NCBI RefSeq assembly: GCF_000150275.1
Contig: NW_002060963.1
Location: 143,669 to 207,668, forward strand
Direction: 5' to 3'
From: Trichoplax adhaerens
Taxonomy: Eukaryota; Animalia; Placozoa
Length of the DNA stretch: 64,000 nt
Shown piece by piece: positions 27,437 to 62,989 of this stretch. The notes under the pieces are model-generated. The model was not told the DNA's origin. It was given only the letters and a program-made list of their open reading frames with translations, and searched no databases. The translations under genes were made by a program, and so were the position numbers. The stretch's first letter is position 1. Each line of letters starts with the position of its first letter.

Positions 27437-28829
27437 TTAAAGAGCAAATGGGTATTGTGAGTGTTCCTGGAGATTGCGTATATATCCTCCAAGGACGGAT
27501 GATACTTTGTCTGCTAGCTTTTCTATTGAAATATCTTTTTTCTGTTGATTTTCAATGAATATCTTTGTATTCATCAGCTAAATTAATATTAATTTGGAAA
27601 GGTCAGCCAATTTTTATTAAAGAATGAGTTGAATAATTTAAAGCGAAAAATACTAAAATAAAGGAAATCATCATAAACTAGTAGAGCCTCAACGACAGCT
27701 GCGATATTGCTTACCGAAGTCTGAGCAATCGTCCACAAGTTGCAAGGGGAGCTTTTCTGATTTGCTAGGCTTAATTCAGAAGATCTAGATAGCTCTAATG
27801 CTTTAGTTTGACAATACAGTGAGAGATCACTGCATAATTTTCCCAAATCAGCAATATCTTTAGCCATTAACTTGTTTTCATCATTATATTTCGACGAACC
27901 AATTTTGTTCGAAAGCAACAGCGCGGAAGTAAATCCTCCCAATCTAGTTGTAATCATGCTGTCCTATTTTATCGTGAAAAAATTCATCATGGAGTAGTAA
28001 GTGCTGCTTATCATTTGTGCTTCAAACTAAATGATATTAGCATTACGTAGCTGCAATCTGTTAATGCATGTAGCAATCATTAATTACTCCATTATAAATC
28101 GATCTTATGTTCACAATTATGAAATGTTGTTTACTGCAGGATACTATACAAATATTTGCTTTACTCATGACAATTTTTAAAGTTTTGATACTGTACTTCA
28201 AGGCAAGATCTCTTATATACAGTATAGCACCTGCTTATAGATACCAATGAAGATGCTTTCTGCATTAATGTGTCGATGAACGATATTACAACTATGTAAA
28301 GATTTAATTGCTCGAACAATATCTTGCACAATTTGAAGGGTTGAGGAAGGTCTCAAAGGAATCAATTGCCGTTTGATGACATAATCCAGTGTGCACATAT
28401 CCTCTCCTACTAGTTCGTAACACACCATCCTATTATAATGACGATTTAAGTTGTTACTTTCTTCCAAGCATAAATTCGACCGAAATACCGTCAAGAAGAC
28501 TAACAATTGCTTTAGTATACTTAAATAGATCGATAGAAGCTTTTGATCAGTAGTATAAAATAATTTAACAAGAATTTTATGCTAGCAAGTTCTACGAACC
28601 ATCGATTTCCATAGTAACTCGAGGATCGGCCATAAGGAGAGCGAAATTTATGACCTTCGCAGAACCATAAGCATGAAATTGTATTGATTAAATTTATTTG
28701 TTTTGATCCATTTTGTTTGTAAAATTCTTTTTCGCGTTCCCAACATTCTCTTTCATTTTCATTATACGCTTTTATTAATCCATAAATTTCCGACCGGTCT
28801 GCCTTGCGTAGCTTAACTTTGAGATATTG
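27437..28829 (-). CDS. Gene A C-terminal protein-kinase-like (pseudokinase) domain, 4 exons
   Basis: GLIKAYNENERECWEREKEFY (subdomains II-III); LQIVQDIVRAIKSLHSCNIVHRHINAESIFI (VIa/VIb); TRLGGFTSA (VII); KDIADLGKL (IX). Exon lengths 230/199/249/141 keep the frame from the 62-nt linker exon. Confidence 0.8.
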
Positions 28830-31800
28830 CTATTGCAAAAGAATCATGACTATCATAGTTTTAAATAATGTAGCGACGCAAGAATGGAGATTAAATGATA
28901 ACTTCTTAAAATAAGCATCAGAGATTGCCACAAATCAAAATTTGAAATAAGAAAAAAGTCGAACTATTGCAGAAACTCAATACTACAAGCCTACTGTCAG
29001 GTCCATCCGCCCCGATATTTACCTACAGTACGATTCTAAATACTGACGATGTCCTATAGTCAGGAGGAACAGTAGCACAACACTAGTCTCTCTTAGACAC
29101 AACTAAACCCAAATTTTATTGAAAATGTTAGTCAACGCATAGAAAATGCACTTAAATATTAGTTATCACTTTATTGATAATATTATACAATTATGCAGTT
29201 ATCTTTTAAAAGTATGTATAACGTCATAGATTAATTAATGTAAATACATTCCAAAGATAAGTTATCTTGTGGAATCGATATTACAATAGCTACGCAAAAG
29301 TTATCCGTAACAGGAATCTATTCTAGATAGACATACCTTGGAAATATTAACAGAATTGGATATTACCGATATACTGGCATAATAATGGGGTCCATAATCT
29401 AGGTAGACCGAAAACATTCGAATATATCGTTAGCAAATATAAGAATTTTAAGGAGGTTATGTCCTATTTTAAACTAAATTGGAGTCCAAAACTCAATGCA
29501 GCTTAGCCAAATTTGCTATCACTTTACGTATTTTAAGCTACCTTTGCCTGGTCCATCAGAGGTTGAAGGCAGATGATTACAATATATCGTTAAGCAGTTA
29601 TGGCACCGGCACTGCATTAGAAATATCCTTGCATATTTAATGAATTTTTTAGTGAAAATTGTGTATAAGATCGGGTTAATACAAGAATTTAACGGTAGGG
29701 ACATAGTAGCAATGAAGGATAGGGAATCCATATCGAATCCTTGCCCGAAGAAAACACGAATTATAACAATGTATAACGGCATCCAGCAAATTAAGTCTGT
29801 AGCTACAATAGATATCATTTTAAAGATGATAATATTATCCTCCAATGATATTTTACTTTGCGTGAGTTTTCGTGAGCGAATAATTTCAATAACAATGACA
29901 ACATACATTATAGTTATGGCTACCCAAGTAACGAAAGTAGTACCGCAAAATGACAGTAGCCAGATGAGCAGATATTGATTTCTGATATTGCTTGGTAAAC
30001 AAACACTAGTTGTCCCATATAATCGATTAGCGGCCGGTTGATTTATGCTATATAGGATAGGGATACCAGTAAAAATAATAGAAATTGACCATAGTGCTAA
30101 CAAAGTTATTGCGTTTGCCTTATATGATAAACGATAATCGAAAAATGGATAGGTAAAATATAAATAGCGGTCGATGGTTATAAGTAAGAGCACAAAAGTC
30201 GACATTAAACTAGATAGAGAAACTAAGAAGGATGCTATTAAACATAATGCACTACGCAACCATACTTCAAGATATTCTGAATATCGTTGAGAATAAAACA
30301 GATTAGCTGAGGCAATTAAAATTAAATAGAATCCCATTAGCAAATCGGCAATAGATAAATTAGTAATTAGTGTTTTAACAATTAGCATATCTTGTTTCCT
30401 GATTTTTAAATGCCAAATGATGGAAACGATATTGCCGATAATAGCTATAGTACCAATAATCCATATAAGTAAGCGTAACACTATATGAGATAGAAGATGG
30501 GAACAAGTGGAAAGTTTAAATTGGTTAGGTAAAGGATTGCAACTGATTATAGATTCTGGAGCAGCACAGCATAAGTATTCCCTATTCGAAACCCTAATTA
30601 AATAAAATAATAGAAGTAATTTTATTCAAGTTTTACGCGTAAACTAATTTCGCCGTTTAATTTTAGACGGATCAATGATATTTCGTAGTCTATAATTATC
30701 GTAAGATATAGTAGGCTGGCTATAGGTTAAATGAAATTGCTAGGTTTATCTATAAAGCACAGTTACATTATCGATAATATCATAATTTGATAATCTTATA
30801 GACTGAACTTTGGTATATAATTGAGTATATATGCTTTTTTAATACTTACATCATTCTTAAATCTGACAGACCATAAAAAGAGTCTCCCTTATATTGAATT
30901 ATTGGATTATTTCTTAAGTTCCTGCAAAAAAAGTTAAGCCTTACTGAAGGATGAATCATAGCTGGCTAGTTATTAATTTATTTTGAAATTGTATAGTTTT
31001 TCAAATTATTAAATTAGATTAATACTTGAGTGTTATAGGAAGCCCTATTGAATAGATTTACCATATTATCTACATAAAATCTTATTCGTTACATGCTTAC
31101 GTACAGGTTTATTAATAAGTGGAAAATGTTGAAACAGTTGGCATCTAATTTATAAATGTTGTTATCGTCTAAGTCCCTAAATAGCGTATTAATAAGATTA
31201 GGAAAAAGGAGTCAGTCGACAAAATATGACGCTTATCTACAAACTGCTATTCCAAATCGGTATTAGATTCCTGTGGGAAATATTCACTTTGAAAACTATC
31301 AACTTTCATGGCCTGTATACAGCAACTAATAGCTGTTTAACGAATAGTTATGTCTAGTCTAGCTTTTAAAAATCAAAATAAATATCTATACTGTTGATAA
31401 AGTACTCATTAGATACAGTTAATATTTCTAAGAAGTAATGTATCTGTTCAATAGGAAGATAGAAAAGCTAATTGTATCTTGAATATAACTTCTAAATAAC
31501 GATTACCATAACTGGTTATAGCTATGATAACATTGCCTTTAATTTTGCATGCACATTTACTTATTTATTATTTGTGTAAGTCACATGTAAATAATTAAAA
31601 CTACGTGTAAAAATGAACTGAATGATCGACATCATGTACGACAAATAATAGCAATGATTTCTTACTTACAGAGCTTTTAATTTCGTCAAAGAAACATTGA
31701 ATTCTGGTTCAATACATACATTCACCAATTTATTTCTAGACAGAGATCTAGAATTTATAGTAACAGGAATAATATAAATGCTAACATTTTTTAATTACTA

Positions 31801-34800
31801 GGATACTAAGGATCAGAAATAAATGTTACTACAATTTTATACCATAGATCAAAATCTAATCTAGAGTATGGAATAGATTTTATATTTTGTTTTAAGCTGC
31901 AGCTATTCTGCAATAATAGAAATTTTGATTATATAGTTAATTTAACTAAGGGAGTTGTAATAAACTTACAGATATTCGAGACCCGTTAGTGTTAGTAATG
32001 TGGCATAGTCTTTATCTCTTAATCGATTACCCGCAAGCCTTCTGTTTGCAGCATTCATTTATTCGCATGTCATTTATCGATGATACAAAAGCATGAAGAT
32101 TAGATGCTAAAGCTAATATAAGCTCATCTTTAATCAAAAGGGCGGTATAACGACTAAGAAAACTTACAGAATACGAAGCGAGTGCAATGGCAGTAGCGAT
32201 TGCTGATCGATTCCTTCGACCTCGTTATTTTCAAGATCCCTACGTATAAAAAAAAACTATTACTATCAAGCTGTAAAGGCAAAATTGATTCTATAAGTAG
32301 GTACGAACAATCTTATGGCGCCCGTTAAAACTTTGAACAGCACGTCAGGAGATTTAATTGCAAGCCCAGCTAGGATCCTATTAATCGCGAGAATTTATAC
32401 GCGTTAATCTTCAATAATTTTTTGCGATCTGATGATGTTATATAATCTTGTATAGATTCTTATGATTTCGAATTTTCAAAGCTGCAACATACACATTCCT
32501 ATATCCAAATTTCTTGGATAGTATGGAAGCAACTGTGTCTAGAGGAATTTTAGTATGGCTTAGGCTTCTATATATTAATTAATTAGTAGAGATTTTAAGA
32601 GCTTAGAACATCTTCGGCCTGTTCTTTTAAGAAAATACAAGATAAATATTATCAATTCGCGGTATACTGATGCATTGTAATACTCGTACCCTACATAACC
32701 GATTAACTAGGTTATAACGATATTATAATTGAATCTTAAACATTGTATTAGTTTGATATTATTTTGAATGTTGGATTCAAATTTTAAGCTAGATCGATGA
32801 TTACATAGCGCTAAGGACACTGAAATTTTCCGGATACTAATTAGAGTTTCAGCTGTTTTATTATTGTAGTGTATGCTTCTAAATACGGTACAGTCTATTC
32901 TTAGTAAAGTTAATTTCCACATAAACTATAATATAACTCCTTGTTTGTATAATCTACATTTAACTATTCATACTGTGGAAATCTCTTATACTCTAGCTTG
33001 ATTATATCGTAGAATTACCCTTATGTAGAATCAAGCTATTCTTAATAGTCATTCGTGTTTTAGGAATAATTTCCTCCTACAGTGCTTCTTACATTATAAA
33101 AGCGCTAATCTTGCATTTATTTCGTTAGTTAGTTCTGCTAGTTACACGATTAGTGTGCACTTTTTATCTATTCTACATTACTATAGCTATTCGACTAGTC
33201 ACGTCTTTGTAAACGCTATGACCTCACACGCTTTTCCTCTTGCACTAATTCCAATAAACTCTACAACTCTGCTAATTTGACTCTTCATAATTTAATTACG
33301 ATTATGACAGACCCTAAGCCTTCCGAAACATCACAATTATATTTTGGCTAATCTAAGATTACTAGTGAGTTATAGACTAGAAATGATATTGGTAAGGTTG
33401 TATGTAAAAAATTGCATCGTCTGAAATGGTATAACTACTGGTCTATTTTCTAACTTACAAGGACTTCAGTTGAGAAATATTGTCAATTAAGCTCTCATCA
33501 ATTCCAATCAAGTTATTACCATCAAGAAACCTAATAAATGAATCAGTTTAACCATTGTACTATTTATTTTTTAATTTATCTTCAGTTGATATGTTCATTT
33601 ACTTGATTATAACACGTCTAATTTAGTCACAATTACTTAAAATTTATGTGCTTTCCAAAAGGTTTATAATAGCAAACTGATCATCATTTACAGAATCTAT
33701 TTTAATTACGCCACATTTGAAAATTTCATTTTATCAATTTAGCTGCCATACAAAAGGTTTCTTTCTCTAAAATTCACTATTTAATTTTAGGAAACATGCT
33801 CTTTGACTGAGATGATATGTTCTAGCATAATTTCAATACAGTAAGATATTGTCACAGTAAAAATATTTCTATATTAGCCTTAGTTATGACGGTAATATTT
33901 TTCAGCAATTTGAGTTCGCGTATTATACTATATTTTAGCGAAGAATATTTTCGCAGCTATCTATATCGGTACACATGAGAACAGTAGAGCTTTTATAATT
34001 AATTATTGTATATTTTGAAATATTACTCACAAGCTATGAGCCGTGGAAATTTTCTGAAATAACTGCCGCTTTACGATGGAAGCATTAAGGTTACAAAATC
34101 GCATACTCCTAGTTTGTCCAGTTAATAATAAAATTTTATGAAATTATTTCTGAAATCTGGATTGCGATTTCATAAAGTGGATCAAATAATAATTAAGTCA
34201 AATTGTTTCAAGATTTTATTGCTACGTAACTATATTAAATACTGCATTAAACTCCTTACAAATTTCGTAGAGACAAAAACTTGTCAAATAAACGAAAATC
34301 GATCGATTGAAGATGTTGATTATGATCAAGTCGCCTAAATATATGTCGGTCAAATGTCGTAAGACTCAGTAGATTGTATGAAAAGCGATCAATAATCTTA
34401 CAAGCTCGCCAAATTTTGTAACCCATGGAAAGAATTTTCTTTCAAACGAATGAATTTATTGTTAGCAAGTTCTCTAAATAATGAAAATAATTAAAGCGAA
34501 TACTCTATAAGATAGTTTATTCTCAGTAAATGAAAAATTAGATGCTTTATAAGATTCTAAACTTATTTTTAGATATTGGTATAGCTTATAGTGATATCAT
34601 CCTCACAGTTGAATTCTCAATTATAGCTAGTTAAATATTATTCAGAAAAGAATTTCGCTTGTCCACTTACAAACTTCCAAGTGAAGTGATAGTTTTGAAG
34701 GCGAAATCAGGAATTTCAGTGATATCGTTGCTTTCCAATTTCCTAGAGCAGATCAATTCAATTGGATTAGTAGCAAAGGTTAAAATAGTATTACATAAAC

Positions 34801-37800
34801 CTAATATTGTATTTAATCGGTAAATATAATCGGCTAGACTTAAAGTTTATTTTCCGAAAAATACAACGAGGAGTACGCAAGCACTCTTAAGTTATATTGG
34901 TTATGCAATACATAATGTGCATTTATATCGTTGATTGCCTGATTTCGCTCAAAAATTATGGATTGGTTAAGATTTAAATTCGATCAGAGCATAACAGTAT
35001 ATTTGCATACTCTGTTAAGTTATAATTTAAACACAAAGCTGTTAAGTTTAAACTGAAGTAAATGATAGTAAGCTTGGAATGCAACTTAGCTTTCAATACA
35101 GTAACCATAATGACCATAAAAAACAGACACTATTTCAGAAATTCATGACATGTCGAGTCTCGTCCCAAATTAATAAAATAGATAGTAAACTATCGTTAAT
35201 CATCTACTTATGATTTTAATTGTAAGATCAAAGATTAAGATTTCTTTGTCACGGTACGAACTACCGTGAAGAAATAACTATCTAAATTTAAACCGTCAGC
35301 AAAGCGACGGGAGTTTGCACTAGTGTGCACTGAAATGATTCTGTGAATGGACATATTGTAGTCCGATTGTGAAAAATTAGTTAGGTAGATGTTCTCACCT
35401 AAGTATTTTTATAAGATAACTCGTGAATGTTAGCTGCTGTAGAAGGGTATATAAGCCCGTCAGATAGTTGAATAAAGTAGTTCTCAATTGTCTAGTTGAG
35501 TTTAACGTAGGATCAAAGGCGTCTAAATTCTTGTGAGGTAGTTAAGGGATACTGAATCCCGGAGACTATAGTAATTTAGAGATTTGTTTTACGTTATCCT
35601 TGTCACGAAGCTGGTTTATGACAGTCTTCAATATGAAAAGAATGATAACAAAAAAACAACTAGATTGAGGATTTCACTATTGGATTTATATGTCTGAGTT
35701 ATATTTATGTAGTAGTAACTTACTCCTTAATGTAATAGTAATTGTATAAAAATTAATTTTTTACTAAGATTTAGATATACTATATCATTATTATAGGGAA
35801 TCAAATGAGACCATATCGGAAATTTATAAAATTATTCACATTTAAACTGGAATTTATGATTGAAAGCGCCGTAAAAGGGTCATGCATGAATTCATGGGTA
35901 AGCTTAATAAAGTAATTTATTACTGAACTGTAAGGTATTAGATATTAATTTAATTTTATCTGGAGAGAAATCAAAACTTATAACGTAATAATGTACTTAT
36001 CGGTACGATAAATATTGTATCTGAAGTAAATATTGTGGTATTAAAGATTAAAAATACATTTTCTTAAGCCATCTTACAATATTCGGAGATAGGGAATATG
36101 AGGAAATAATGAAATTGGTATAGCTTTAAGTCGATTTTCGCCTAGAAACCTAAGATTGAAAGGTAAAGTAGAAAGGTAAGGATTCAGTATAATTTAGCAC
36201 TATGTCGCCTTGTAAATGTATGAAAAAGAATGGATTTGGTATTTACAGTTGTTCCAAAGAAGATAAATTGCTAAAAGCTCTATTATCGATTTTAGTTATT
36301 CTGTTATGGGTTAAATTTCTAATAATAAATGATGCCGATTAGTAAAAGTTTAGGATAATTCCGGGTTGTATTAGCAAAACATCTTGCAGTAAAACTAATC
36401 GCGATCGATCATTCACTAGCGAACGATTTTCGATGGGAAAGTTGTATTCACTTTATTATTTTTTAGAACAATTTTAGGGTCGGCTATTATATTCACTTAC
36501 ACCAGATGTAGTGGGCTGTAGGATGAAAATATATGTGTTTCTAAATATTCAATCTGATTGTGCCCTAACCATCTATTTTAACAATAAGTAAAACAAATGG
36601 TTATACTGAAGATGAAATTAACATTTTACTATTGATTTGCATATAGAGATTGAGTACGAATACCTATTGTAAGTGCTCTTTAATATTACACGGGATAAAT
36701 ATAATTTTTACGTATATATTGCATATATTAGTAAGTAGGTATGGTTTAAAATTAAATGAAATGTTTCCATGAAGAGGTTTTGTAGACGTTACAATGTGAC
36801 TTGCAACTCGATTATAGTCAAGTACATTATCTCTGTCTATTGTGACAGAAAATGGTAATGATATGATATTTCAAAGCTCACATTTGTTGTAAAGACTTCA
36901 TATCAGCAAAGATATTACTGTGCAAGGTTGATATTAAGTTCTTCGTAAGGTTTCTGTAAGCCAAAAGTCCGAGAGTAAAGTCAATTTAATTGATAAATGG
37001 ATTTAATTGAGTGATTTCGATTGCTACTCTAAAAGCAAGTGTAGCAACTAATTATATATTAAAATAAAGTAGTACATTAGTAGAAATCGAAAGTTCAAGA
37101 ATATAGCCATACTGTTTTCCTGCCTATATTTATGAATTTTAATTTGGAACGGTGATACTTTAATTTAAGTCTACGGTCGATTAAATCAGAATTATCCTTA
37201 ATATGAAAATCTTGAAACTTGGTTAAACTTAAATTTAGAGAGTAAGAGAGCCTTGGAGTATTTAAATATAGAAAATTATATCTTTATTCTATTAGTTTAA
37301 TCGATTAGTACTAAAGGCTAAAACAGGATGTATGATTATGAGGCATCATAGAAATACCGTCTGAGGACTTTAATACATTTTGTTAGTACAGTGCCCTAAA
37401 TCTAAGCATAATGGATAGATAACTCAAAATTTTTATTTCTTTTATATCTGCTGAAATAGCCTACGTTACGTGCTAGAAATAGCCCTAACTTGCAACTAGG
37501 AGTGAGTGAGTACTCTCTAGCCACACTACTATTATTTGGAATACTAGTCAGTTAGTATTCCTGGGCAGATAGGATTTAACACCGTAAGGCCTTCAAACTT
37601 TCTAGAAAATCACAATCTAATTTATTATCGGCGAAGCCGCCGCTCACATAGGTTTTGGTACCTAAAACCGGTTGGACTACATAAGTTATCTCGTCTATTA
37701 TAAATTGACCAATTTATTACTATATAGAGCCCCTATCTGTACAGGTTAAACAAAGTCTAATCCTATTAAATTTACCGTATCAGGATTAAATTAATCAATT

Positions 37801-40800
37801 CTTAATAATAGTTTAACAAGCACATATTAGGCTATCCTACTAAGATATTTCCTCTAAACTTAGAAATTGTACTTTCAACCTTAAAATCCTTGGAGGCGAT
37901 AGATAAAATCTTGTTAAACTAGTTGGTAATTACTTTCTCAGTCTATCTAATTCTAAATTAAGGATTAATAACATATCAACTGTTAACCACTAATGTTACA
38001 ATTAAGGTGGTCGTAAACATTTCTGAGATATAACATACGTGTTTACAGAACGCAACATAGAAATAAAGTACATGCCACGAAGATAGCTTTCATGACAGCC
38101 TAGCTTAGTTTACGATTCTCTTGCAAAGATGTAACTATTCAAGGTCAAAAAATGATTGTCAGGAGATAAATATAAAATTGTTGCGATCAAAGTCAAAAGC
38201 CTATCATTTTAGAGTTAAATTAATGATAGTACTTACATAGATCTTACATATTCGCATTCAGCAAATTGGAGACGACGCAATTTATCAATCTGATTCATTT
38301 GTAATTCTCTACAGGTAAAAATAGAAAGATGTTGTTATTGATGCAATTAACTAAAGCATCTAGAAATATCAATATGCTTACATGTACATTAGCTTTGTCC
38401 CGTTACAAAAATGGTTGGGAATTCGTTTCAATCGATTGTAACCTAGATCTCTAGATTGATAGTATGGCATTGAAAGTTAAAAATTAAAGTTAGTAGGTGG
38501 CGAAAGTTATCTAAATATTATGCCATTTTTCATCTATTTCATGTACTTGTATTTATAAAATACGATTAAACGCCTAAATGTGAGTATTAGGTATTATAAC
38601 AATTGCCTATTATGCATAATAACCAGCAAAAGCAGGTATTTTCAATAGCTGTAACATAATGTATATGTAACGACCACTAACATATATAACTGGTAATGTA
38701 TAGTACGTGAAGGTATTCATTGACTTTTGTAATGTTACTTAGTATTGTGATTGTAGACAGTTAGCCATGTTTAGTATAATGTACGGTAGATATTTATCCT
38801 AAGAGATATTTGGTAGCTATAACTATAGACTATAGTGGTAGAGACTCTATGCTAGAGTATACATGACTATATACAGTAAGCTGTTGAGTTACTAATAAGG
38901 CTATAGGTAAAAATAAAACTATAAATCATATATTAGGATATGGTTAATTCATTGTACTTTGGCTGGTGTGAATAATGTCTACGTAAGTACTGTAGTCGTA
39001 TTCATATTGGATTAATGATGGTCCGCAGTAGAATAGTCTTACTAAGAATAATTTAACTATGTGTAAAATAAGGTAAAAGGTTGCTATGCGAATTGTAGCT
39101 GCGAATGCTACGGAAAGTATAAAAGCATGCAACTTTAGATTATTCTGTTAGTTCGTTGTAGAAGTCTTTAGTAGTGTATTCGGCTAGAGTAGAGCTGTGT
39201 GTAGTTAATCTTTGTATAAGATTGAATAAAGCCCTTATTTTTCTAAAATTTGGAATCTCGTGATTGGTATATATCACAATTTTAAATTAAATTTAAGAGT
39301 TGAATATGATTCTAATTTTAGCCTAAACATCTACTCTGAAATAGTTTTAACGGTCGAATTAATAACTATCTTTAAAATCAAGTCTAACTTACAGTTGATA
39401 TAATAATGGAAAGTTGGAAAATAGTCCATCTTGAAGTTTCTGGATAATATTCCCTTCAAGATAGCTAGGAGATGATATGAATGCAACATGTAGCTAGGCT
39501 AAGTTTTAAATAACGATATCCTACTTGATAACAAAATAGTACTGATGTACGGAATATTACTGTCTTCTATGGCTTACAGATTCCTTATCTCTATCATTTT
39601 GGATTTTTGTGTATTAAGTAGTATGGTGATGTAGTTGTAGCTAATAAGGCTAAATTTAAGCATAGATGTGGACAAGATTTACGTACGCTCATAGTTCATA
39701 AGAAAAGAAATGAGGTAGGCAATTCACATTAAAAGTGAGAATTAACATTTCATTTTTTTGACTTACACTATACGCAATAATTTGAGCTCGGTAAATACCG
39801 CAAAATCAACTGAAGTTAGTCCATTAATAGTCAAATCCCTGATTGAACATAGTAAAATATTTCGATAGATTGATTCGCTACCGATATTAATTCAATATTT
39901 ATTTTAGAGGAAGTATTCATAATGAGTTATCAATACGACAACTGTTTTATATACTGCTCAATCATTATGAAGACATATCTTAATAAGTATACTTAAGTAT
40001 TCTCGATAATGATTACAAACATAATTTTTAAGCAATTATTTCATGATGATTCTCACAAATATGTCACTTTTTGTAAGTTCTGGAACAAATTTTCGGGCAA
40101 CGAAGTAAGAAAATTGATTCTAAAATGACTAACAGAATGAGAAATTTAATTACTTTCTTCCATTATTTTTAACTTGAGTAACATATAAACGTTTGCATGA
40201 TTTATATTTCGTAATATAGGTTATTTTTTAGAACTCTCCTTCAAAATTTTGAATTGAGAAAGTAATTGTAATGTATATATAAAAGTATAGAAGATACATT
40301 ATAAGTGTTGCAATATAAATCTTTACCACCGTAATTAATTTAGTATTCTAATTACAGTAGACTTTCTGTCGTGGGTTGTCACAATTTTGCCTTTGCGAGT
40401 GGGCTACAGTATACTAATTCAGTAGACTACTTATACCCTGAAATCGAAGGAGTTCTATAGTCGAGGATAAATTTTCATCACACAAGATTATTCTAGCTAG
40501 AATTAATATAGTCTAAGTTTATTTGGTATTTGGCCGTATATTTCTTATACCGTAGAACTAAGGAACTGGACAGTTAATTGGCCGATAGTCCTCTCTATAC
40601 CCTTACCATTAATCGGTGATTAACATTGTGTAAACGAGCTATCTAATTACTAAGTGCAATTTCGTGACACGGATATATTGTAAATCGGATTGGTTTTTGT
40701 GGATTATGAATTATTGTTGTTGGATAGTCATAATTTTTGGAAGCATTGCAAATTGTAACAAGCAACTTAGTCGATATGAGAATTTAGTTATTGTAATATT

Positions 40801-43800
40801 TTTATTTTAAAGAGGACTAGTTTTATAGCAATATGCTCACTAGGATAACAAATTTTGTTTATAAATTGATTATGGAAGTTCTATTAGTTTGTCATAAAGT
40901 TCGATATAATGTGAACCCGATTGTTTTATCTGAGTTCTAGTTTAAAGGCTTTAGCTTGTATAAGTTCTTTCATTATACGTTGTATATCGCAGTAAATGAT
41001 TGTAGCCGGACTTGATTGTTATCAAATTATGGTCATATTATTGACTGAGTGGCTTAATGTCCAGGAGTCTATCGTCAGAGCTATTATGTGAGGTTAATTA
41101 CTAGAATAATTTGAATAGAGATTATTTTTTACTTTAATACAACCTACTACTCTACATAGCATATAAAAAGTGATGTGGTTTGAATATTGAGTAGTTAAAG
41201 GTTCTTAAGTGAAGAGAAAAAATGCTGAAAAGAAATGACTCTGTAATTTTAAGTAATTCTTATCGGTTTTAATTTAGTGCTATTTTGTCGTTGTCATTAA
41301 AATCGGGAATAAAGTGGCATTTTCCCCTGTTTTAAGTTGATTCAAAGTCTAATTTCTGTAATTTAGCAAAGTTATAAAATGACTAGAATATGTAATTAAT
41401 TTGTGAAATCACTCGTGTTTGTGCTCTACTTTTAGTTACGATTGTATTTACCATGCTCATTGAAAATAACCTAGAAATAGAACGAGTTTGTGATGTTATG
41501 TGTAATCTTTAAACTGCAACTAATCCAGATCATCTCAAATCTAATTTTGCAAGCCTTTCAATGACTTAAGATATTTGAGAATTGTTCCCAAATGTAACTA
41601 TTTTTAATGTAAGCAATCGAAGTAAGTCACTAACAAATAAAAGTTTTGACGCAATATGGAGCAGTTTGACATTGCAGCTACGATTGAAAATCCACGAGAC
41701 TATTCAATCCTATGCGTGGTAAAAAATTCAAGCATAGTATGCGAAATATCACCAGCGAGGCACTCTGCGTTGAGCTGGTCTTGGATGTCAAGACTGAACT
41801 ACATAATAAATGCTATTTTAAACTATGCCCGCTATGGGTGGGTTTAGCCTTTTTAAGACTAGTTTATACTGTAACGTAGAGTTATTAAATCGAAATTTTT
41901 AGGTTTAGTCATGTTGTTGCAAGTTGATCGGATTTAAAGAAATATTTACATGAATTGTAGGTTAGATATATCTTTGAAAACTTCTGAGTTCAGTTCTTTG
42001 ATATTGTTCTTATTGAAAGCTCTAAGATGAAAATCAAAAATTGATCCTTGCAATTAATTACACAATTAGTGGAGTTATTTTACATATAACGAACAAGTGA
42101 TATTTATAGAATGTACAAATGGACTCGTATTCTTGCTAAAATAAATCAATGATAAAAATTCCATCAGTTTTTGCTTGAAATGCTACAGAAAAATCGATTT
42201 CAGCTACTTAATGCTACTAAATAATTAAGCTAAACTCGAAGTAAATTAGAAAATGCTAACACTATCAGTAATTATGGTGGAGTAGAAGAAAACTTCTTCA
42301 TAGTGCTGTAGCCAGAATTTAAAATCGAGCGACGGTAATGTTGAAAAGAACTAATCTTACAATTGATTTAGTGTTGTTCCTTTAAATGCCTTGATATTAT
42401 CGATAGCCAATTTATTTCCATTTAGATTCCTAATTATAGGCATAGAGATAAGCTTTGCGCTTTAATTTATCTTTCTAGATTTAGCACTATGATAGCAACG
42501 TAATTACAATATGACTTTAGAGCTGAAACGAACATTGTAGCCTCGGCCCAAGGTTTTCGTTTAACAGTGTTTACTTCGTGCTTCAATACTTGCAACTGGT
42601 TCATTTTTAAATCTCTAAATATCAGATACATTTTATATATTAATGTACACAGAAGTGGACATAATAATAATATATGTGAGTTAATTAAATATAAAAACCA
42701 TTGGTCATAGAATAAATTCATAATGGAGTATTCTACTTACATATATCTTAATCTATGTTGATTGTTGAAAATTCGTAGATCAATTTCACGAAGACGATTT
42801 CCGTAAATATGGCTGTAAATGTAAATAGGGAATCATTAATTGGAATGATTTTATGTAAACTATTAATTAGCGTGTCGTCAGTGCAGATAGATCAAATTTA
42901 AAGTGATTTAGAATTAAGTTTTATAAATAAATGGCAGTTCATAGTTTAAAAGGTAGGATAGTTCCTATTATTATCACCAAATATTATTCAGTCTATCTGG
43001 TAATTATATTCATTCATTTGAGTTAAGTCCTTTGCTTGTTTAAATATTTTTATTTTCTATTACATGGGTAAGTTAATTACTGTATTTGTTAAATATTTAT
43101 TTTGTGTAAAAAGTAGACATTAGATAGGTTAAACCAGCTGAATTTCTTTAGTTAGTAAACATCTCTATGTTACGTAGCAGGTGATAGTAAAAGGGACTAT
43201 GTATGAGCAGTACCTGTATAAGCACCTTAAGTATAGCGGTGTAAAAGGCAGAAGGGAATTTGTAACATTAGTTACGAGCAATTTGCGAAATCCGGCATTT
43301 TGCAAAATGCCGGAAATGCCTGATTTCGCAGATTGCCGGTAGCCAATGTTAATACGCAAAAATGAACATAAAAGTATTCCAAGTCTATTTTACCACAGAC
43401 TTTTAAATAGAATGCATGAGTATGAACGGTATACAGCACTTTGTGTCTATCGGCATCAATTTATACGTATCTACAACTTTTTCTGACTTTCAAATTACTA
43501 TAACGTACATCTGTCAATATCTCGACAGTACATTACAAATTATTATATTTCAATGGTAAATTGCTAGACGATAGAATTTCAGAGCCATCATCCTTTCTTT
43601 ACTCTTATAGTGAAGATACTACAGTACCGTCATTACCACATTCAATCTAATACTGTTACCGCATTTATTCAAAAATTCGTCATTTTACAAAATCACTAGG
43701 CGTACTACGGTAAATTACGATATTCCACAATAGTCCATTTACGTAATTCGCAACAACTCGAGTCCTTGATGGTTTTACTAATTAAGATGGTTTAAGTGAC

Positions 43801-46800
43801 AGATTATGAACTTGTACGTCAATTCGAGCTATGACTATAGTAGTTACATCCAGAGCTCTTTACTTTATAGGTCAGAAATCTACTACGGAGGGTAATAGAT
43901 TTAGATTATGTTACTGTTATAATGGTAGCCACTATGTATTAAGATAGAGAGATTTTGCATGAAGCCAATAGCGAAAATGAAGAAGATTTATCAGCAAATA
44001 ATGATACATGTAAACAAGGAATTTAATACGGAATCTTACAGTTGTGATAGAAAGACTGAGCTAGCAAACATCTTTTCCGACAAGGTAGTGATGTAGTTAA
44101 AGTCGAAATAGCTGTAAAGAGGTGAAAATATTGCGAATATGTTATAGTTAAGTGCTGACGGAGAGTTCATAAAAATTACTTCAAGCCTTTGAATTGTACA
44201 CCATGTTAATTAATGCTTATTTCTCTTATTTATAATTAATCATACACGATATTTAAATTCGGCAAATCATTAAAAGCTGCTTCTTCGATGGTCGATATGG
44301 AATTTGAGGATAGATTTCTACATTTTTCGTTAGATCAAGAGAGTCATGATAAATGATTTTGAATGGTTACATTTGCAAAAATGCCATTTAAAATCGTTTA
44401 ATTATACCAGTATATAAAGCAATTCAGTATACGGATGTACTTACAAATACGCCAAATTCAAAAGCGAATTAAATTGATTGGAAACAAGAGTCTTAATCTT
44501 ATTCCGTGCTAATGATCTATATTGTCAATAATACAACACTTCTAGTTTTATTTCTAACAACGGTAAAAGCAAGTTTTGCCGTAATCTTTTATATATTGGC
44601 TAGGTCAAGGAAGCTTCATTAAACTATATTTCTTACCATATCAGGCATTACTTAATTTTTATCTAATATAAAGTATCTTAAATAAAATCATTTTTGCAAA
44701 TATCAAAATTTGATGTAAACTTGAAAATCAAGAGACTTAATAATTAGTCGGTTAGGACGATGAGCTTTTTGAGACAGCCACTTATCGCCAATAGTATACA
44801 TGAAAAGTAGACAGTAATTTTCCTAATTCTTATTTACTTGATCAACTTTAATACCTCGATAGCTTTAATGGGCTACTTACAGCGATCTCAATGCAGGTAA
44901 CATATTAAAGCTATATGGCTCCACTATTTTGATTAAATTTGCTTCTAGATGTCTATTAATATCAATTAAGTTAAGTTACCTTTTTATCGAACGATAAATG
45001 GTGCTCATACTATTAAACAAATCTGTTTTGTTAACATTATAATCATATCGATTAATAAATGGTCTTCAGATGAAGTTTATTATTTGCGTACTGACTTACA
45101 AGTCTATAAGAGATGAAAGAATGGGAAAACTTGTATTTCTTACGGCAGAAATATTATTAAGATTAAGATATCTATCGACAGATCATACCGATTAGATTCG
45201 ATTCTTCGTTTACTATAGCCATTACTTGGCTAAATGAACGTTGAATTATTTTCTTTATTCTTAAATCAAGCTGCTAAATACTCACAAATACATTAAATCA
45301 GACAACCCTTTGAATTTGTGCCTTTCTAATCTGAATGCCTCAGGTCCAACATGGCTCAAATCGCTAAGATGAAACGTATCAAAAATTTAAAATAATGTAT
45401 AGCTAGGATTTCATACGAAGTCAATAAAACTAGATTTTTTAATACCATATTTATGTTAACGTCATAAATTTGTTTTCCTAACTAACTTTATAGTTTAACT
45501 GTTACTTTACTTATGCCTACAGATATTTTAACTTTGGATGATGGCTGAATGAATAGTTAGAATGAATGCGGCATGCAGCAATGTTCCTAGATGAAATAAA
45601 ATAACAAAATATGGACATAGTTATAGTGTGAGATTACCAATCAATCTTATCAGGTATTGTTCACTTCATGTAAAAATGTTGTTTTATATTTGCAGCTCAT
45701 GATCGTGAGCTATTATATTATTGGCGACAATACCGGCAGTAACTATTATTTATTAGCTATGGAACTAACAAAGAATCCAGGTTGGAAAGTTGTGATAACG
45801 CTGCTCCTCCATCGTCTGCTAAATTCATTGAGGAAGCCTCCCTAGGTGTAATTATTAACGTTCGTATATAAAGTAAAAGAAGATTATTCAAGTTCGTAAA
45901 TGTTTCCTTACCTGTCGTATAGTAGCTTATTTTGCAAGCTATTATGAACCGTTCATATAAGGTAAGCAATTTTTATTATTGTAATTAATGATCATTAATT
46001 ATAATGGCTTACAGAAATTCAATGTTGCGGAAAACTAGGAGAGAATCTTCCTTTAACGTAGGTACGTATGTATATTTTAAACTCCTGTAGACAGCAAATA
46101 AGGTACAAACGCATTAGAATCTTAATAGAATCAAATGGACACTTTATAATAACCAATAGTTTCTTAACAATGTTATGCTCGGTATGCTATATACGATTTA
46201 GTAAGCTATGTGATTAGTCATCATATTCACAATTATGTCTTTCTGTAGTTATATTTACAAGTATTATGAGCTATAGCTATAAATGATGCAAGATATCATT
46301 CACATAATTGTATTATTGTAACAAAGATCAATTTAGAGAATACTATGTTCTGTATGTGTTATATAGAGAGGAGTGTTAGTCTTAACGGTGAATAAATATC
46401 TAATTTTTATTCTGAAGTCTACATTTACAATTTTTTTAATTCCGGCAGCGGACTTGCTGTGAGCAGTGGTGATATCGATGAGATTAAATTGCTTTTCAAG
46501 GATCTAAGTTATAAATACATTAGTATAAAGTTTTGAAATTGCTAAGCACTACGTATAATAAAGTTCTTTCACGATAATTCGTACCGTGCTTAGGAAATAA
46601 ATAAGAAAGCTATACAGAGTGGAAGCTTACAAGCTAGTTAAACTTCGCATTATTGATAAAGTTGACGCATTAATGTGAGTAATGAAATTTTTATCGGTTC
46701 TCCTGAAATACGAAAGTCAATTTGGTAATTGATTAATTGTTTTACTTGTACGATCTCAGCGTTAATGGGTGAGATTCCATTAAATTTAGCTCATTTAGAT

Positions 46801-49800
46801 ATTGACAGTATCGTAACATGATGTATATAGGAGTATACAACTTTACATAGTGCTTAACTTACAAGGTTTTTAAGGAATTGGAGCAATTGCTCAGGGCGTC
46901 AACGTTGAGTTTCTCTAATCGATTCATCTCCAGAAATCTGTTTACGTATGATAGCAATTTCCGCTTATTAATGGTTGTATGTGTGATATATATGCCAATA
47001 TAGCAGCGATATTAATTTTTACAGAAGGTTCTTACAGTTATTTTGACACTCATTTTATAACGTACAATCAATTATAAATTTTTAAATTATTTTGAACAGT
47101 GTTAGAGCTGACAAATTAAGATTATTTGGATAGGAAAACAACATTCTCTAAATTTTCAAAATAGAATAAGGTAAGTTCTTTGCTTTTCGAGTATTGTATA
47201 ATAAGTACTAGATAAATAGTGCGTGTATTTCGAAGGTGGAACGTCGCACTTACATCTAGAAATAATAAGGGCAAAGTGCAGGAGAAAGAGTAACAAAATA
47301 CAGCTAAAGCTAAAAGTAGCGCAGCTATCAAACGGAACTTATTAAATCGACCTTCTTTGTGCCGCTCGTGTAAATTATTCCATATATATATATAAATCGA
47401 ATATATCAAAGGTGAACAATTTCTATTTTTCTTAATTGTTAGGTTAATGCCTTACATATATTTTAGCTGTCTTGGACCATTGCAGATGCTTTCATCAATT
47501 TCTCGAAAGGTGTTTCTATTCAAATTTCTATAATATTTTGCAAAAGAAAATTAATCATAAATTACGACCCATTATCATTTTAAATAATACTAGGTTACAC
47601 GATAGAACTAATCTATTAGCGGCACTTATAAAGACGTAATTAGGATAAAAGTTACATTTCTTGCAGTGAAACAAGATTGGAAAAAACTCCTAGAGGAAAT
47701 TGCTGTATTCTGTTGTCGTTTAAATCTCTACGTAAGAAAAATTTTGTCGTTTTTATAATTATTATCAATTTTTTAATCTTACTGACTCAGCTGAGTATAA
47801 CTTGGCTATACGAGCTCGTATGATTGTATTCACAATCGAAACCTTTTCTTTCAAAGAATTTATTTTTGTAGATTTGATTTTAAAAGTAAGCTGTGATTTT
47901 ATCAGATATTGTACAGCAGTACTTTACAATCTAAAAAATCATGATTAGGATAACTTACAGCTTTACTAAAGAAATTAATCCGTAAAATGTCTGATTGCTG
48001 AGTACTTTCAGGGCATTAGAAGATAGGATCCTAAAATCAGTAAATACCTTAGCTCTTTTTTTTAGCAGATGTTTTAATTATGAGAGCATTGATAATTAAT
48101 CATAAATTATTTCGGCAAGGTGAGAGTACATGATAAATGAGTGTTTATACATTACTGATTAATTGTTATTATATTGTTGAAAATAATGTTCTAAATGTTA
48201 CAATATCGTATAAATATTTATGATTGTCAAAGATAGTTCTAAAGAATTTATGTAGGTGAGCTTATTTTCCATGTTTATGACATTTTAAATTATTTGCTTT
48301 CTTACAAAATTTTTAAGTTGCTTAGCTCTTTAAATGCTCCGTCACAAATAGTTTTGATGCCGCAATTCTCAGCTTTGCTAATTATTAGATATAAACAAGT
48401 CGAATAGTGCTGATGAGATTTATTTTAAATTATGAATGTAAAGTATCAGTTAAATAGAAATAATCAAAGCTAAAGATTATTACAGATAATTCAGACGAGG
48501 CAATTTTGAGAATACTCCACAGTTGAGGTAACGCTGTCTTCTACTAGCGATGTTGCTATCAAATAATAAATCAATCTTATTTATTTCGTTATAATTCTTT
48601 CGCGCGATCTATTGTAATATCTATTAAAGATATTCTTGGCTAATTTAATGATTGAAACATGGCTGTATTAGCTTTGCGGAAAAATAGCTCTATACGGCAG
48701 TTGGATAGTTATATCTTCTATGTTAACAGCATTCTTATAAATATATAATCATTATAATATAACTCTAGTAACAAAGAGATAGCTGAGTATCACGAATTGC
48801 CAGCTAATATCATTTTATCAGGATAAATTCTTATTTCTCGGAACTAACAGTGATTTCAAGGAAGGCATTTCATGAAACAATCCTCGGGCAAGATCGTTGA
48901 TGTCAGTGTACGCTAGATTACTAAAAGCAAAAAAGTAACCTGTTTTATTAATTTTTTAATATATATTAATGGAGCTATCTGATATTGAGGTGTACATATA
49001 TAATTTTGCCATCACATTTTGATTAATATCACCTCGATACTGTACTAACATAGTTGTGATGTTTTTCATGTCTGAAAAGAAATTTCTCTCAAATGCTGTG
49101 ATTGGGTTTCTTTGCAAGTTTCTGAACAAATAATAACATACTCGTATAAGTTTTAATTTTTTAATTCTCAGATGATCAAGGGATTTTTGTGCGGTTTAAT
49201 GATAACCCGAAATTTCTAGTTAGTTTTAGTTATTCGGTATTATTAAGCTAAATAGTATGTTGACTAATACACATATGCTCAGTTCTTAGTTTATGAAGTA
49301 TGTTAAATATTTTCTGTTCTAAGTAAGTTTAATCAAGGATATAACATAGACACATAGAGTATTAAAGAATTTGTTAATACAGTACTTACAAATTTTGCAG
49401 GAATTTCAAATTTTGAAGAGTTTGACGATTTATGCTTCGAATTTTGTTCGATGATAATTCTCTACCATAAAGAAGATAGAAATAGAGCTGTCAATTGCCC
49501 AGTAAAAATGGTAAAAGAATCTATGGAAGTAGATAAGCTCACATGAAATTCAAGCTTAGTAGATTGGAAAATGTTCCATTTTCAATTACTCGAATATGAG
49601 AGTTTCTTGCATATCTGGCATAATTTCAGATAATTTGTTTACAAAATATAAAAATACAGAGATAAGACACATTTATTCATCATAAAATAGTAATCCTGGA
49701 AAAAATGCAATAATGAAATAGTATAAATTTTAGAAGAAAGGTATGATACTCTTGTCACTTATTTACGTACAATCCCTTTAAATTTCTTAATGGCTTAAAA

Positions 49801-62875: not shown

Positions 62876-62989
62876 GGCGTCTTGAGCTTGGTCTTCCTCC
62901 AAACCACTCGGATGCAAGTGACTTGACCTACGTGTCAACTAGACTGCGCGCTGACGTTTCGAACGTCCCTGATGCGTTTCTTTGTCCTT

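What the first reader, a model, noticed from the sequence alone, without database searches (positions are those of the whole stretch)
27437..30593. Rhodopsin-class LRR-GPCR fused to an intracellular pseudokinase domain
Seen: after TM7 (NPILY) and a short tail, a 62-nt linker exon and four further exons splice in frame (phases 1-0-2-0-0) to add ~270 aa with protein-kinase subdomains in order. Established: characterised LGR/RXFP receptors end in short C-tails; GPCR-enzyme fusions are best known from oomycetes and Dictyostelium, not as a standard animal architecture. Inference: one polypeptide combines an LDLa/LRR ectodomain, a 7TM with intact DRY and NPxxY, and a kinase fold. It could be a receptor class coupling G-protein signalling to a built-in scaffold or allosteric module. 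Automated annotation would probably split it into a GPCR and an orphan ORF.
Basis: partly seen in the sequence, partly recalled or inferred. Interest (0 to 1): 0.92.

Follow-up and report, generated by a model that had tools for sequence, protein, structure and literature searches.

The report
Hormone-type GPCR with dead-kinase tail
This Trichoplax gene most likely encodes a leucine-rich-repeat, hormone-receptor-type GPCR that continues after its seventh membrane helix into a catalytically dead kinase-fold domain, a design I found in no paper on animal rhodopsin-class receptors; I could not check the splicing with RNA.

Summary
On the minus strand a 7tm_1 exon (30593-29542, with DRY, CWxP and NPxxY) is followed by five GT-AG-bounded exons. 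They join in frame (phases 1-0-2-0-0) and end at the stop at 27437.

The tail is kinase-like. One exon hits Pfam Pkinase weakly. A profile of the paralogue tails hits only protein kinases in the PDB. AlphaFold models fold confidently, and the nearest solved structures are TGF-beta/activin receptor kinases, then IRAK, RLK and RIPK kinases (Z 15-16). It lacks the HRD Asp, the catalytic Asn, the DFG Asp and the Gly loop, so it is a pseudokinase.

Evidence for fusion:
- All 14 non-fragmentary paralogues of this 7TM subfamily carry the same tail exons downstream, with conserved exon phases.
- Tail dN/dS in recent duplicates is 0.2-0.4.
- The public Trichoplax sp. H2 orthologue (RDD40245.1) is already one fused model.

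One correction: the third tail exon starts at 28429, not 28519. Without it the H1 sequence reads into a TAG.

I found no homologues outside Placozoa. This scan had already reported the same family at other loci of this genome.

The parts
29542..30593 (-). Large exon: Cys-rich hinge, seven transmembrane helices (DRY, CWxP, NPxxY) and the start of the C-tail. It ends in phase 1 at the donor AAG|GTAGCT. Read through unspliced, it stops at 29519 after 7 more codons.
   Evidence: Pfam 7tm_1 E 6.5e-25. 343/350 residues identical to the H2 orthologue. Frame and splice sites checked.
29337..29398 (-). 62-nt linker exon, phase 1 to 0. The junction codon G|AT gives Asp, followed by Y-G-P-H-Y-Y-A-S-I-S-V-I-S-N-S-V-N-I-S-K. 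It probably forms strand beta-1 of the kinase-like N-lobe and has no Gly-rich loop.
   Evidence: Homologous linker exons of 63-72 nt lie between the 7TM exon and the first tail exon in L021, L023, L027, L031 and L034, with a donor directly after the last codon (phase 0) in four of the five (L021, L027, L031, L034). The shared G|AT entry codon (phase 1) I read off for L031 only. Public paralogue models P0047, P0048 and P0050 include them. The H2 orthologue model omits this exon.
28830..28832 (-). TAG. Its AG is the acceptor of the first tail exon. If the linker exon is skipped and the H2-type acceptor at 28851-28850 is used, this TAG is an in-frame stop just before the kinase-like domain. H2 encodes Gln here.
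28600..28829 (-). Tail exon K1, phase 0 to 2: strands beta-2 and beta-3 with the conserved Lys (G-L-I-K-A-Y), helix alpha-C with the conserved Glu (W-E-R-E-K-E-F-Y), and beta-4.
   Evidence: tblastn to 12 paralogue loci, E down to 1e-11. 75/76 residues identical to H2. pLDDT 84-93 in the P0051 model.
28231..28429 (-). Tail exon K2, revised start, 1+198 nt, phase 2 to 0: beta-5, hinge, alpha-D, alpha-E and a degenerate catalytic loop (H-R-H-I-N-A-E-S in place of H-R-D-x-K-x-x-N).
   Evidence: Pfam Pkinase E 5.3e-5 and PK_Tyr_Ser-Thr E 4.8e-4. Same exon size and phase in the six other paralogues whose exon edges I placed cleanly (L021, L023, L027, L030, L031; L025 is 195 nt). 66/66 residues identical to H2.
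28430..28519 (-). It is an open frame but most likely intron.
   Evidence: No homology in paralogues or in the H2 orthologue.
27715..27963 (-). Tail exon K3, phase 0 to 0: the DFG-equivalent (L-G-G-F, no Asp), a short segment in place of the activation loop, and a long alpha-F-like helix.
   Evidence: 83/83 residues identical to H2. Homologous to the paralogue K3 exons. Helix 924-965 in the P0051 model has pLDDT 91-96.
27437..27577 (-). Last exon K4 (46 codons plus a TAA stop): two C-terminal helices.
   Evidence: 45/46 residues identical to H2. Resembles, by eye only (no alignment or score), the last exon of the L031-L035 paralogues and of P0047. Helices 975-998 and 1002-1023 in the model.
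30800..55006 (-). Upstream part of the same gene (approximate span): dozens of single-repeat LRR exons and a Cys-rich N-terminal exon at 54887-55006.
   Evidence: Open segments with LRR consensus on the minus strand. The H2 model covers 37160-30800 with LRR_8 E 4.9e-43. The N-terminal exon is homologous to the neighbouring gene's LDLa-like exon.

Best explanation
Window 27437-30593 (minus strand) is the 3' end of one gene of about 27.7 kb in Trichoplax adhaerens. The gene encodes a placozoan-type LGR: many leucine-rich repeats, a Cys-rich hinge, and a rhodopsin-class 7TM with intact DRY, CWxP and NPxxY. A flexible stretch of about 25 residues follows TM7. The protein then continues through a 62-nt exon and four further exons into a kinase-fold domain of about 290 residues.

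The domain has a full N-lobe and keeps the beta-3 Lys and the alpha-C Glu. Its C-lobe is shortened. It is closest in shape to TKL-group kinases, with TGF-beta/activin receptors first. It lacks the catalytic Asp, the catalytic-loop Lys and Asn, the DFG Asp and the Gly-rich loop, so it should not transfer phosphate.

Shown here: the exons, their frames and splice signals; the kinase fold; the loss of catalytic residues; the conserved linkage across about 15-20 paralogues; purifying selection on paralogue tails; and a fused public model of the orthologue.

Inferred: the exons are spliced into one mRNA. Also inferred: the receptor signals through its 7TM core, while the tethered pseudokinase acts as a docking or allosteric module. 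It could dimerise receptors, or recruit or sequester an active kinase or another effector. Known parallels are the kinase-homology domain of receptor guanylyl cyclases and the pseudokinases IRAK3 and NFR5.
For: - Exons join in frame with GT-AG introns.
- The linker and K1 exons contain no in-frame Met; the first is at the start of K2. An independent tail gene would therefore lack a start for its N-lobe.
- Every one of the 14 non-fragmentary loci with at least 50% 7TM identity has a K2 exon 1.2-5 kb downstream on the same strand. None of the roughly 55 more distant LGR 7TM exons does.
- Exon sizes and phases are conserved in paralogues that are only about 37% identical in the tail.
- Tail dN/dS is 0.20-0.39 in recent duplicates, against 0.18-0.56 for their 7TM exons.
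- H1 against H2: tail 269/271 identical, 7TM 343/350.
- Public fused models exist: RDD40245.1 (the orthologue), RDD39592.1, RDD45093.1, RDD36152.1 and TRIADDRAFT_62465. The H2 models come from the evidence-based Maker pipeline with RNA-seq (PMC6057997).
- Kinase fold of paralogue tail P0012: AF2 pLDDT 78, pTM 0.79. Foldseek gives at least 500 PDB matches and every listed row is a kinase, best E 1.2e-7. VIA-align gives Z 16.2 for ACVR2A, and the top 38 entries are all TGF-beta-family receptor kinases. The unbiased wide search gives TGFBR1 15.5, ActRII 15.4, then RIPK, RLK and IRAK kinases; all 50 rows are kinases.
- This gene's own orthologue: the tail has pLDDT mostly 84-96 with the same order of secondary-structure elements. 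It is 34% identical to P0012, E 5e-32. ESM Atlas neighbours of residues 752-1030 are all kinase clusters, score 0.97.
- The family profile against PDB sequences returns only kinases among the 60 shown, best E 1.1e-4, with the catalytic loops aligned.
Against: - There is no transcript evidence for any junction.
- The H2 orthologue model skips the linker exon. The same splice in H1 meets a TAG, so the junction between the 7TM exon and the tail is the least certain part.
- An unspliced 7TM exon would give an ordinary short-tailed receptor, with a stop at 29519.
- Pfam kinase scores are below gathering cut-offs, and P0012 alone finds no PDB kinase by phmmer.
- TM-scores to kinases are only 0.40-0.51, because about 200 of 271 residues align and the C-lobe is shortened.
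- No homologue of the tail was found outside Placozoa.
- The H1-H2 conservation is barely above what genomes with 99.1% nucleotide identity give neutrally (PMC6057997).
- The proposed mechanism rests on analogy only.
Confidence: 0.76

Rival explanations
1. There are two transcription units: a conventional short-tailed LGR that ends at the stop at 29519, and a separate downstream gene for a small orphan pseudokinase.
For: The JGI annotation of a paralogue does exactly this, with TRIADDRAFT_61684 and TRIADDRAFT_61685. The H1 record for this locus holds only a 312-aa GPCR ORF. The unspliced 7TM exon terminates cleanly 7 codons past the donor.
Against: The linker and K1 exons have no in-frame Met. 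The JGI tail model needed a dubious 10-codon first exon. The linkage, order, strand and phase compatibility with the 7TM exon are kept in all 14 non-fragmentary subfamily members. The H2 evidence-based models fuse them.
Confidence: 0.08
2. The tail exons of this particular copy are rarely or never included. This could be through alternative splicing or polyadenylation, or early decay, so the main product in strain H1 is a tail-less receptor.
For: With the splice pattern of the H2 orthologue model, H1 reads V-M-I-L-L-Q-stop. The family contains at least one copy with stops, at C1394:267620-270248. The tail diverges faster than the 7TM, about 37% against 58% identity among paralogues.
Against: All five tail exons are open with intact GT-AG sites. 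The tail is 269/271 identical to H2. The linker exon that avoids the TAG is homologous to linker exons of the paralogues.
Confidence: 0.12
3. The tail is an atypical but active kinase or nucleotide-binding switch, not a dead scaffold.
For: The beta-3 Lys and the alpha-C Glu are conserved in all paralogues. Some paralogues keep an Asp at the DFG position (G-D-F in P0048 and P0050). From general knowledge, precedents exist for kinases active without canonical residues, such as WNK and CASK.
Against: In this gene the HRD Asp is His, the catalytic-loop Lys is Asn, the Asn is Ser and the DFG Asp is Gly, and there is no Gly-rich loop. No paralogue keeps the HRD Asp. The activation segment and part of the C-lobe are missing.
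Confidence: 0.04

Closest known systems
Type C LGRs: relaxin receptors RXFP1/2 and GRL101-type receptors
   Same: LRR ectodomain, Cys-rich hinge and rhodopsin-class 7TM with DRY and NPxxY. The best solved sequence match of the family profile is RXFP1 (7tmw, E 5.2e-64), followed by LGR4. NCBI names the H2 orthologue 'GRL101-like'.
   Different: It has far more LRR exons. It belongs to the placozoan-specific LGR expansion of 41 of 46 T. adhaerens LGRs described in PMC9545775, a paper where the word 'kinase' does not occur. LDLa is only weakly indicated.
GPCR-kinase fusions: GPCR-TKL/K of acanthoecid choanoflagellates, GPCR-TK of choanoflagellates and sponges, and the oomycete and amoebozoan GPCR-kinases (PMC12716839)
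   Same: A 7TM domain followed by a C-terminal cytoplasmic kinase-fold domain. The kinase part is TKL-like. Function is unknown in all of them.
   Different: Their 7TM domains are not LGR or rhodopsin-class, and their kinase domains are recognised by Pfam/InterPro. [quoted passage not shown] Here the kinase is degenerate and falls below Pfam thresholds. This looks like an independent fusion.
TGF-beta/activin/BMP receptor kinases and other TKL kinases (IRAK, plant RLK, RIPK)
   Same: They are the nearest solved folds: ACVR2A Z 16.2, ALK2/ALK1/TGFBR1/TGFBR2 15.2-15.9, IRAK4 15.0. In the wide search TGFBR1 scores 15.5, ActRII 15.4 and RIPK/RLK/IRAK 14.1-15.1. From memory, the alpha-C motif W-x-x-E-x-x-F-Y resembles the S-W-x-x-E-x-E-I-Y motif of these receptors.
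   Different: Those are active kinases of single-pass receptors, with a GS or juxtamembrane region and a full C-lobe. Here the catalytic residues and the activation segment are missing. Z differences of about 1 are ties, and no phylogeny was possible.
Tethered pseudokinase modules: kinase-homology domain of receptor guanylyl cyclases, JAK JH2, IRAK3, NFR5
   Same: A kinase fold without catalytic residues, attached to or acting with a receptor as a regulatory or docking module. IRAK3 (Z 14.1) and NFR5 (Z 14.6) are among the structural matches.
   Different: None of them is attached to a 7TM receptor. The resemblance is functional analogy, not shown homology.

Membership tests
LGR (leucine-rich-repeat-containing rhodopsin-class GPCR) | Rhodopsin-family 7TM domain | tested here: met
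   Pfam 7tm_1 E 6.5e-25 at 88.5 bits (cut-off 30.5), profile positions 3-260 of 260.
LGR (leucine-rich-repeat-containing rhodopsin-class GPCR) | N-terminal LRR ectodomain joined through a Cys-rich hinge in the same protein | tested here: met
   The H2 orthologue P0051 has LRR_8 E 4.9e-43 ahead of 7tm_1. LRR exons lie upstream on the same strand. The hinge is encoded at the start of the 7TM exon. Best PDB sequence matches are RXFP1 and LGR4.
LGR (leucine-rich-repeat-containing rhodopsin-class GPCR) | Activation microswitches DRY, CWxP and NPxxY | tested here: met
   D-R-Y, C-W-M-P and N-P-I-L-Y are present in the translation.
Type C LGR (RXFP/GRL101) | N-terminal LDLa module(s) | tested here: inconclusive
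   No LDLa pattern was found by regex. The Cys-rich exon 54887-55006 has no Pfam hit. Its homologue in the neighbouring gene (23744-23869) gives Ldl_recept_a E 0.0022 at 18.6 bits, below the 24.1 cut-off.
Eukaryotic protein kinase fold (Pkinase clan) | Sequence match to the kinase profile above the curated threshold | tested here: not met
   The K2 exon scores 23.2 bits against a cut-off of 31.7. P0051 scores 19.2 bits. Paralogue tails P0012 and P0007 give no Pfam kinase hit. The family profile does hit only kinases in the PDB, best E 1.1e-4.
Eukaryotic protein kinase fold (Pkinase clan) | Bilobal kinase fold: five-stranded N-lobe with alpha-C, hinge, alpha-D/E, catalytic-loop strands, alpha-F | tested here: met
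   For the P0012 model, Foldseek gives probability 1.00 and E 1.2e-7, and every row listed (of at least 500 matches) is a kinase. VIA-align gives Z 15.5-16.2 with about 200 aligned residues and rmsd 3.1-3.9. The P0051 tail has the same elements at pLDDT 84-96. The C-lobe beyond alpha-F is shortened.
Catalytically competent protein kinase | HRD Asp, catalytic-loop Asn, DFG Asp and a Gly-rich loop | tested here: not met
   The catalytic loop reads H-R-H-I-N-A-E-S, the DFG equivalent reads L-G-G-F, and the linker exon has no GxGxxG. The register comes from the hmmsearch alignment to MAPKAPK3 and CDKL3. No paralogue keeps the HRD Asp. The beta-3 Lys and the alpha-C Glu are kept.
TGF-beta receptor (STKR) kinase family | Groups with STKR kinases to the exclusion of other TKL kinases; GS or juxtamembrane region | tested here: inconclusive
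   STKR kinases top both structural rankings, but only 0.4-1.2 Z above RIPK, RLK and IRAK kinases. The sequence profile ranks MAPKAPK3, CDKL3, PAK and IRE1 first. No GS motif was seen. No phylogeny was possible with the sequences at hand.
GPCR-kinase fusion receptors (GPCR-TKL/K, GPCR-TK) | One polypeptide with a 7TM domain followed by a kinase domain | tested here: inconclusive
   Met at the level of gene models and conserved exon structure. It was not verified with transcripts. Homology with the described families was not tested. The 7TM here is rhodopsin/LGR, unlike theirs (PMC12716839).

The most novel reading that the evidence does not exclude
The roughly 15-20 placozoan LGR-pseudokinase receptors form a distinct receptor class. 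In this reading a TGF-beta-receptor-derived dead kinase, tethered to a G-protein-coupled 7TM, pairs with active type I/II receptor kinases or other TKL kinases. LRR-sensed ligands would then feed directly into Ser/Thr-kinase or Smad-type signalling, as a hard-wired bridge between the two main animal receptor systems.
Probability: 0.1. Interest if true: 0.85.

Novelty: new variant of a known kind. Interest (0 to 1): 0.64.

Why it matters
GPCR-kinase fusions have been reported from oomycetes, amoebozoans, choanoflagellates and sponges. The 2025 survey of holozoan GPCRs states they were not found in other animal lineages (PMC12716839). The review that counted 46 LGRs in Trichoplax does not mention a kinase (PMC9545775).

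If the splice is real, a second early-branching animal phylum has independently attached a kinase fold to a GPCR. Here it is a rhodopsin-class hormone-receptor type, the kinase is dead, and the design has been multiplied to about 15-20 genes. That offers three things:
- a natural test case for how a tethered pseudokinase modulates a 7TM receptor;
- part of an explanation for the puzzling LGR expansion in an animal without neurons;
- evidence that domain surveys based on Pfam thresholds and split gene models miss such architectures.

Tried and rejected
- **K2 exon against 1.84 billion representatives.** It found only placozoan fragments and generic multi-kinase proteins (Pfam). No 7TM-kinase protein from another phylum appeared.
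- **Tail of P0051 against proteins of 566-1802 aa.** Nothing. The long Trichoplax models are hidden behind short cluster representatives, so this blank says little.
- **Tail profile A2 against proteins of 149-474 aa and against the own genome.** Only Trichoplax paralogues; no bona fide kinase reached E 0.1.
- **P0012 alone against PDB sequences.** No kinase.
- **Profile A1.** Swamped by LRR and GPCR hits, so I rebuilt it as the tail-only alignment A2.
- **Co-divergence of 7TM and tail identities.** The Mantel r of 0.89 is carried entirely by recent duplicates. Without them r is 0.16, so this says nothing about the old paralogues.
- **ESM Atlas with 7TM plus tail.** The best score is 0.84, an oomycete kinase cluster; this is a lead only.
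Rejected in favour of 28431/28430.
- **The H2-type junction without the linker exon.** Rejected for H1 because it meets a TAG.
None of my searches supports it, but their reach was limited.
- **Joined sequence.** Exons were searched one by one by reference, and the public orthologue P0051 stood in for the whole protein. The only joined computation was a local frame and stop check.


Full report
**Source and setting.** The window is contig C1394:143669-207668 of a 105.6-Mb assembly in 1414 contigs. Its proteins carry TRIADDRAFT names, so this is the Trichoplax adhaerens H1 reference genome. GC content is about 30%. The finding lies on the minus strand.

**Observation.** The 320-codon ORF 30481-29519 sits inside an exon that starts at 30593, after the acceptor TTAATTAG.
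- Its translation gives Pfam 7tm_1 at E 6.5e-25.
- It contains D-R-Y, C-W-M-P and N-P-I-L-Y.

The phases are 1-0-2-0-0, all five introns are GT..AG (143, 507, 80, 267 and 137 nt), and the frame ends at TAA 27439-27437. The junction codon between the 7TM exon and the 62-nt exon is G|AT, giving Asp.

**One boundary needs correcting.**
- The six paralogues with cleanly placed edges have a 1+195/198-nt exon at the K2 position; phase 2 entry was worked out for three of them (L021, L023, L027), and all six end directly before GT.
- The window has the same exon if the acceptor at 28431-28430 is used, giving W-M-V-C-Y-E-L.
- The public H2 orthologue uses that site.

**Is the tail a kinase fold?**

*Sequence evidence is weak but consistent.*
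- Exon K2 alone gives Pkinase E 5.3e-5 and PK_Tyr_Ser-Thr E 4.8e-4. Both are below the gathering scores.
- The H2 orthologue gives Pkinase E 8.6e-4 at residues 834-907.
- A tail-only alignment (A2) built from two public tail proteins plus exon-by-exon references from the window and 11 paralogue loci, searched as a profile against all PDB sequences, returned 294 matches at E up to 10.
- The 60 matches shown are all protein kinases, best E 1.1e-4. The family's I-v-h-g-s-i-n-t-d-a aligns on I-A-H-R-D-V-K-P-E-N.

*Structure evidence is stronger.*
- AlphaFold2 of the paralogue tail P0012 (TRIADDRAFT_61685) with this family alignment gave pLDDT 78 and pTM 0.79. The elements are beta1-3, alpha-C, beta4-5, alpha-D, alpha-E, two catalytic-region strands and long C-terminal helices.
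- Foldseek found at least 500 PDB matches at E up to 0.001. Every listed row is a kinase, best 1.2e-7, with TM 0.40-0.51 over about 190 columns.
- VIA-align on those chains put ACVR2A first (Z 16.2, 206 residues, rmsd 3.9). The next 37 entries are all TGF-beta/activin/BMP receptor kinases, and IRAK4 and SYK follow at 15.0.
- The Foldseek-independent search of 48,161 chains gave TGFBR1 15.5, ActRII 15.4, then RIPK, plant RLKs, NFR5, IRAK1/4, RIP3 and IRAK3. All 50 rows are kinases.

*For this gene itself.*
- The orthologue's tail is 34% identical to P0012 over 194 residues (E 5e-32).
- A full-length model of the orthologue has the tail at pLDDT mostly 84-96, with the same order of elements. Residues 731-757 form a low-confidence tether.
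- The ESM Atlas neighbours of residues 752-1030 are all kinase clusters at 0.97.

*Verdict on the fold.* It is a kinase fold of TKL-like shape. TGF-beta-family receptors are the top neighbours, but within about 1 Z of other TKL kinases, so membership in that family is not established. The part after the DFG position is short: there is no recognisable activation segment and the C-lobe is reduced.

**Pseudokinase status.** In this gene:
- the catalytic loop reads H-R-H-I-N-A-E-S, so Asp is replaced by His, Lys by Asn and Asn by Ser;
- the DFG position reads L-G-G-F;
- the linker exon, which takes the place of beta-1 and the Gly loop, has no glycine motif.

Across paralogues the HRD Asp is never present. 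The DFG Asp is present only in some, such as P0048 and P0050. The beta-3 Lys and the alpha-C Glu are always present. Catalysis is therefore very unlikely. A folded, active-like core that binds partners is plausible.

The case rests on five indirect lines.

1. *Linkage.* A K2 search of the genome gave 20 places. A 7TM search gave 74.
   - The 14 non-fragmentary loci whose 7TM exon is at least 50% identical to this one each have K2 1.2-5 kb downstream on the same strand. Twelve also have a detectable K1, and where both are found K1 lies between the 7TM exon and K2.
   - None of the roughly 55 more distant LGR exons coincides with a tail hit.
   - A profile search found only these loci.
   - This pattern fits one fusion event followed by expansion to about 15-20 copies.
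2. *Exon structure.* A linker exon of 63-72 nt lies between the 7TM exon and K1 in all five paralogues examined. Its phase-0 exit is visible in four of them and its phase-1 entry was worked out for L031. K1 runs from phase 0 to 2 and K2 from phase 2 to 0. These features are conserved although the tails are only about 37% identical. The window's linker peptide resembles those of L031, L034 and L023 by eye.
3. *No independent start.* The linker and K1 exons have no in-frame Met.
4. *Selection.* Among the recent duplicates L031-L035 the tail has dN/dS 0.20-0.39. With dS up to 0.48 this is similar to their 7TM exons. Between H1 and H2 the tail differs at 2 of 271 residues and the 7TM exon at 7 of 350. 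This is only weak evidence, because the two genomes are 99.1% identical overall (PMC6057997).
5. *Independent annotation.* The Maker evidence-based models of Trichoplax sp. H2 fuse receptor and tail for the orthologue (RDD40245.1, 1030 aa) and for three paralogues. JGI fused TRIADDRAFT_62465 and part of TRIADDRAFT_61684.

**The weak point.** The orthologue model skips the linker exon and enters K1 21 nt early. In H1 that path reads V-M-I-L-L-Q and then TAG at 28832-28830; H2 has Gln there. With the linker exon this TAG is simply the acceptor AG. A tail-less isoform remains possible, either through this splice or through read-through to the stop at 29519.

**Rest of the gene.** LRR exons continue upstream well beyond the H2 model. 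A Cys-rich exon at 54887-55006 is homologous (37.5% identity, E 1e-4) to the N-terminal exon of the neighbouring gene at 23744-23869. The neighbour's exon has a sub-threshold Ldl_recept_a match. The gene therefore spans about 27.4-55.0 kb. LDLa is indicated only weakly.

Its 7TM, K1 and K2 exons lie 4-10 kb before the window start (L028), so it also ends in the kinase-like domain.

**Comparison with what is known.**
- PMC9545775 reports 46 LGRs in T. adhaerens, 41 of them placozoan-specific with very many LRRs. The word 'kinase' does not occur in that paper.
[quoted passage not shown] The T. adhaerens proteome was among those sampled, and none of these receptors has been characterised functionally.
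- Further searches for placozoan, LGR, GRL101 or GPCR together with pseudokinase found nothing relevant.
- I found no tail homologue outside Placozoa. Those searches are limited by length windows and by sensitivity.

I therefore rate this a new variant of a known kind: a known architecture class (7TM plus kinase) in a new combination (rhodopsin-class LGR plus dead TKL-like kinase) and a new phylum.

**Earlier notes of this scan.** Earlier notes report the same family at seven other loci of this genome. My census agrees with their 'about 15'. One note's claim of a wide invertebrate distribution is not supported by anything I could run.

Noticed in passing
window 1-24300 (minus strand); L028 = C1394:133700-143600: The 5' part of a neighbouring paralogue fills the first 24 kb of the window. 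It consists of LRR exons and an LDLa-like first exon at 23744-23869 (Ldl_recept_a E 0.0022). Its 7TM (55% identical), K1 and K2 exons lie 4-10 kb before the window start, so this tandem neighbour also ends in the kinase-like domain.
   Followed up: partly
window 54887-55006 (minus strand): A Cys-rich exon homologous to the neighbour's LDLa-like exon (37.5% identity, E 1e-4 within the window). It probably marks the N-terminal end of this gene, which would then span about 27.7 kb, far more than the 1030-aa public H2 model covers.
   Followed up: partly
window 28830-28832: TAG in H1 where the H2 orthologue model reads Gln.
   Followed up: yes
G000 C1394:267620-270248 (outside the window): A family member whose 7TM match carries 3 stops (45% identity). 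The 4 TAG and 2 TAA inside its tail match may be intron read-through. Possibly a pseudogenised copy.
   Followed up: no
G000 C1384:436185, C1384:396389, C1384:522007, C1413:5533, C1413:39929, C1410:4821447: More distant LGR 7TM exons (36-38% identity) sit in open frames of 530-600 aa. This suggests another subfamily with a long C-terminal extension encoded in the same exon. No kinase-tail hit occurs there.
   Followed up: no
proteins P0032 and P0001 (ENA contigs of up to 2961 nt): A 7TM ORF 70% identical to this gene and a K2-like ORF 44% identical (catalytic loop H-S-N, also dead) have the same contig count and the same longest contig length. They are probably the orthologue in another placozoan lineage with the linkage preserved. 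The contig could not be fetched.
   Followed up: partly
window 52552-53032: A tandem repeat of period 80/158 nt, 3-6 copies, 75-77% matches, inside what should be an intron of this gene.
   Followed up: no
window 62001-64000: GC content rises to 0.415 against about 0.30 elsewhere. A 17-nt tandem repeat lies at 63545-63606.
   Followed up: no
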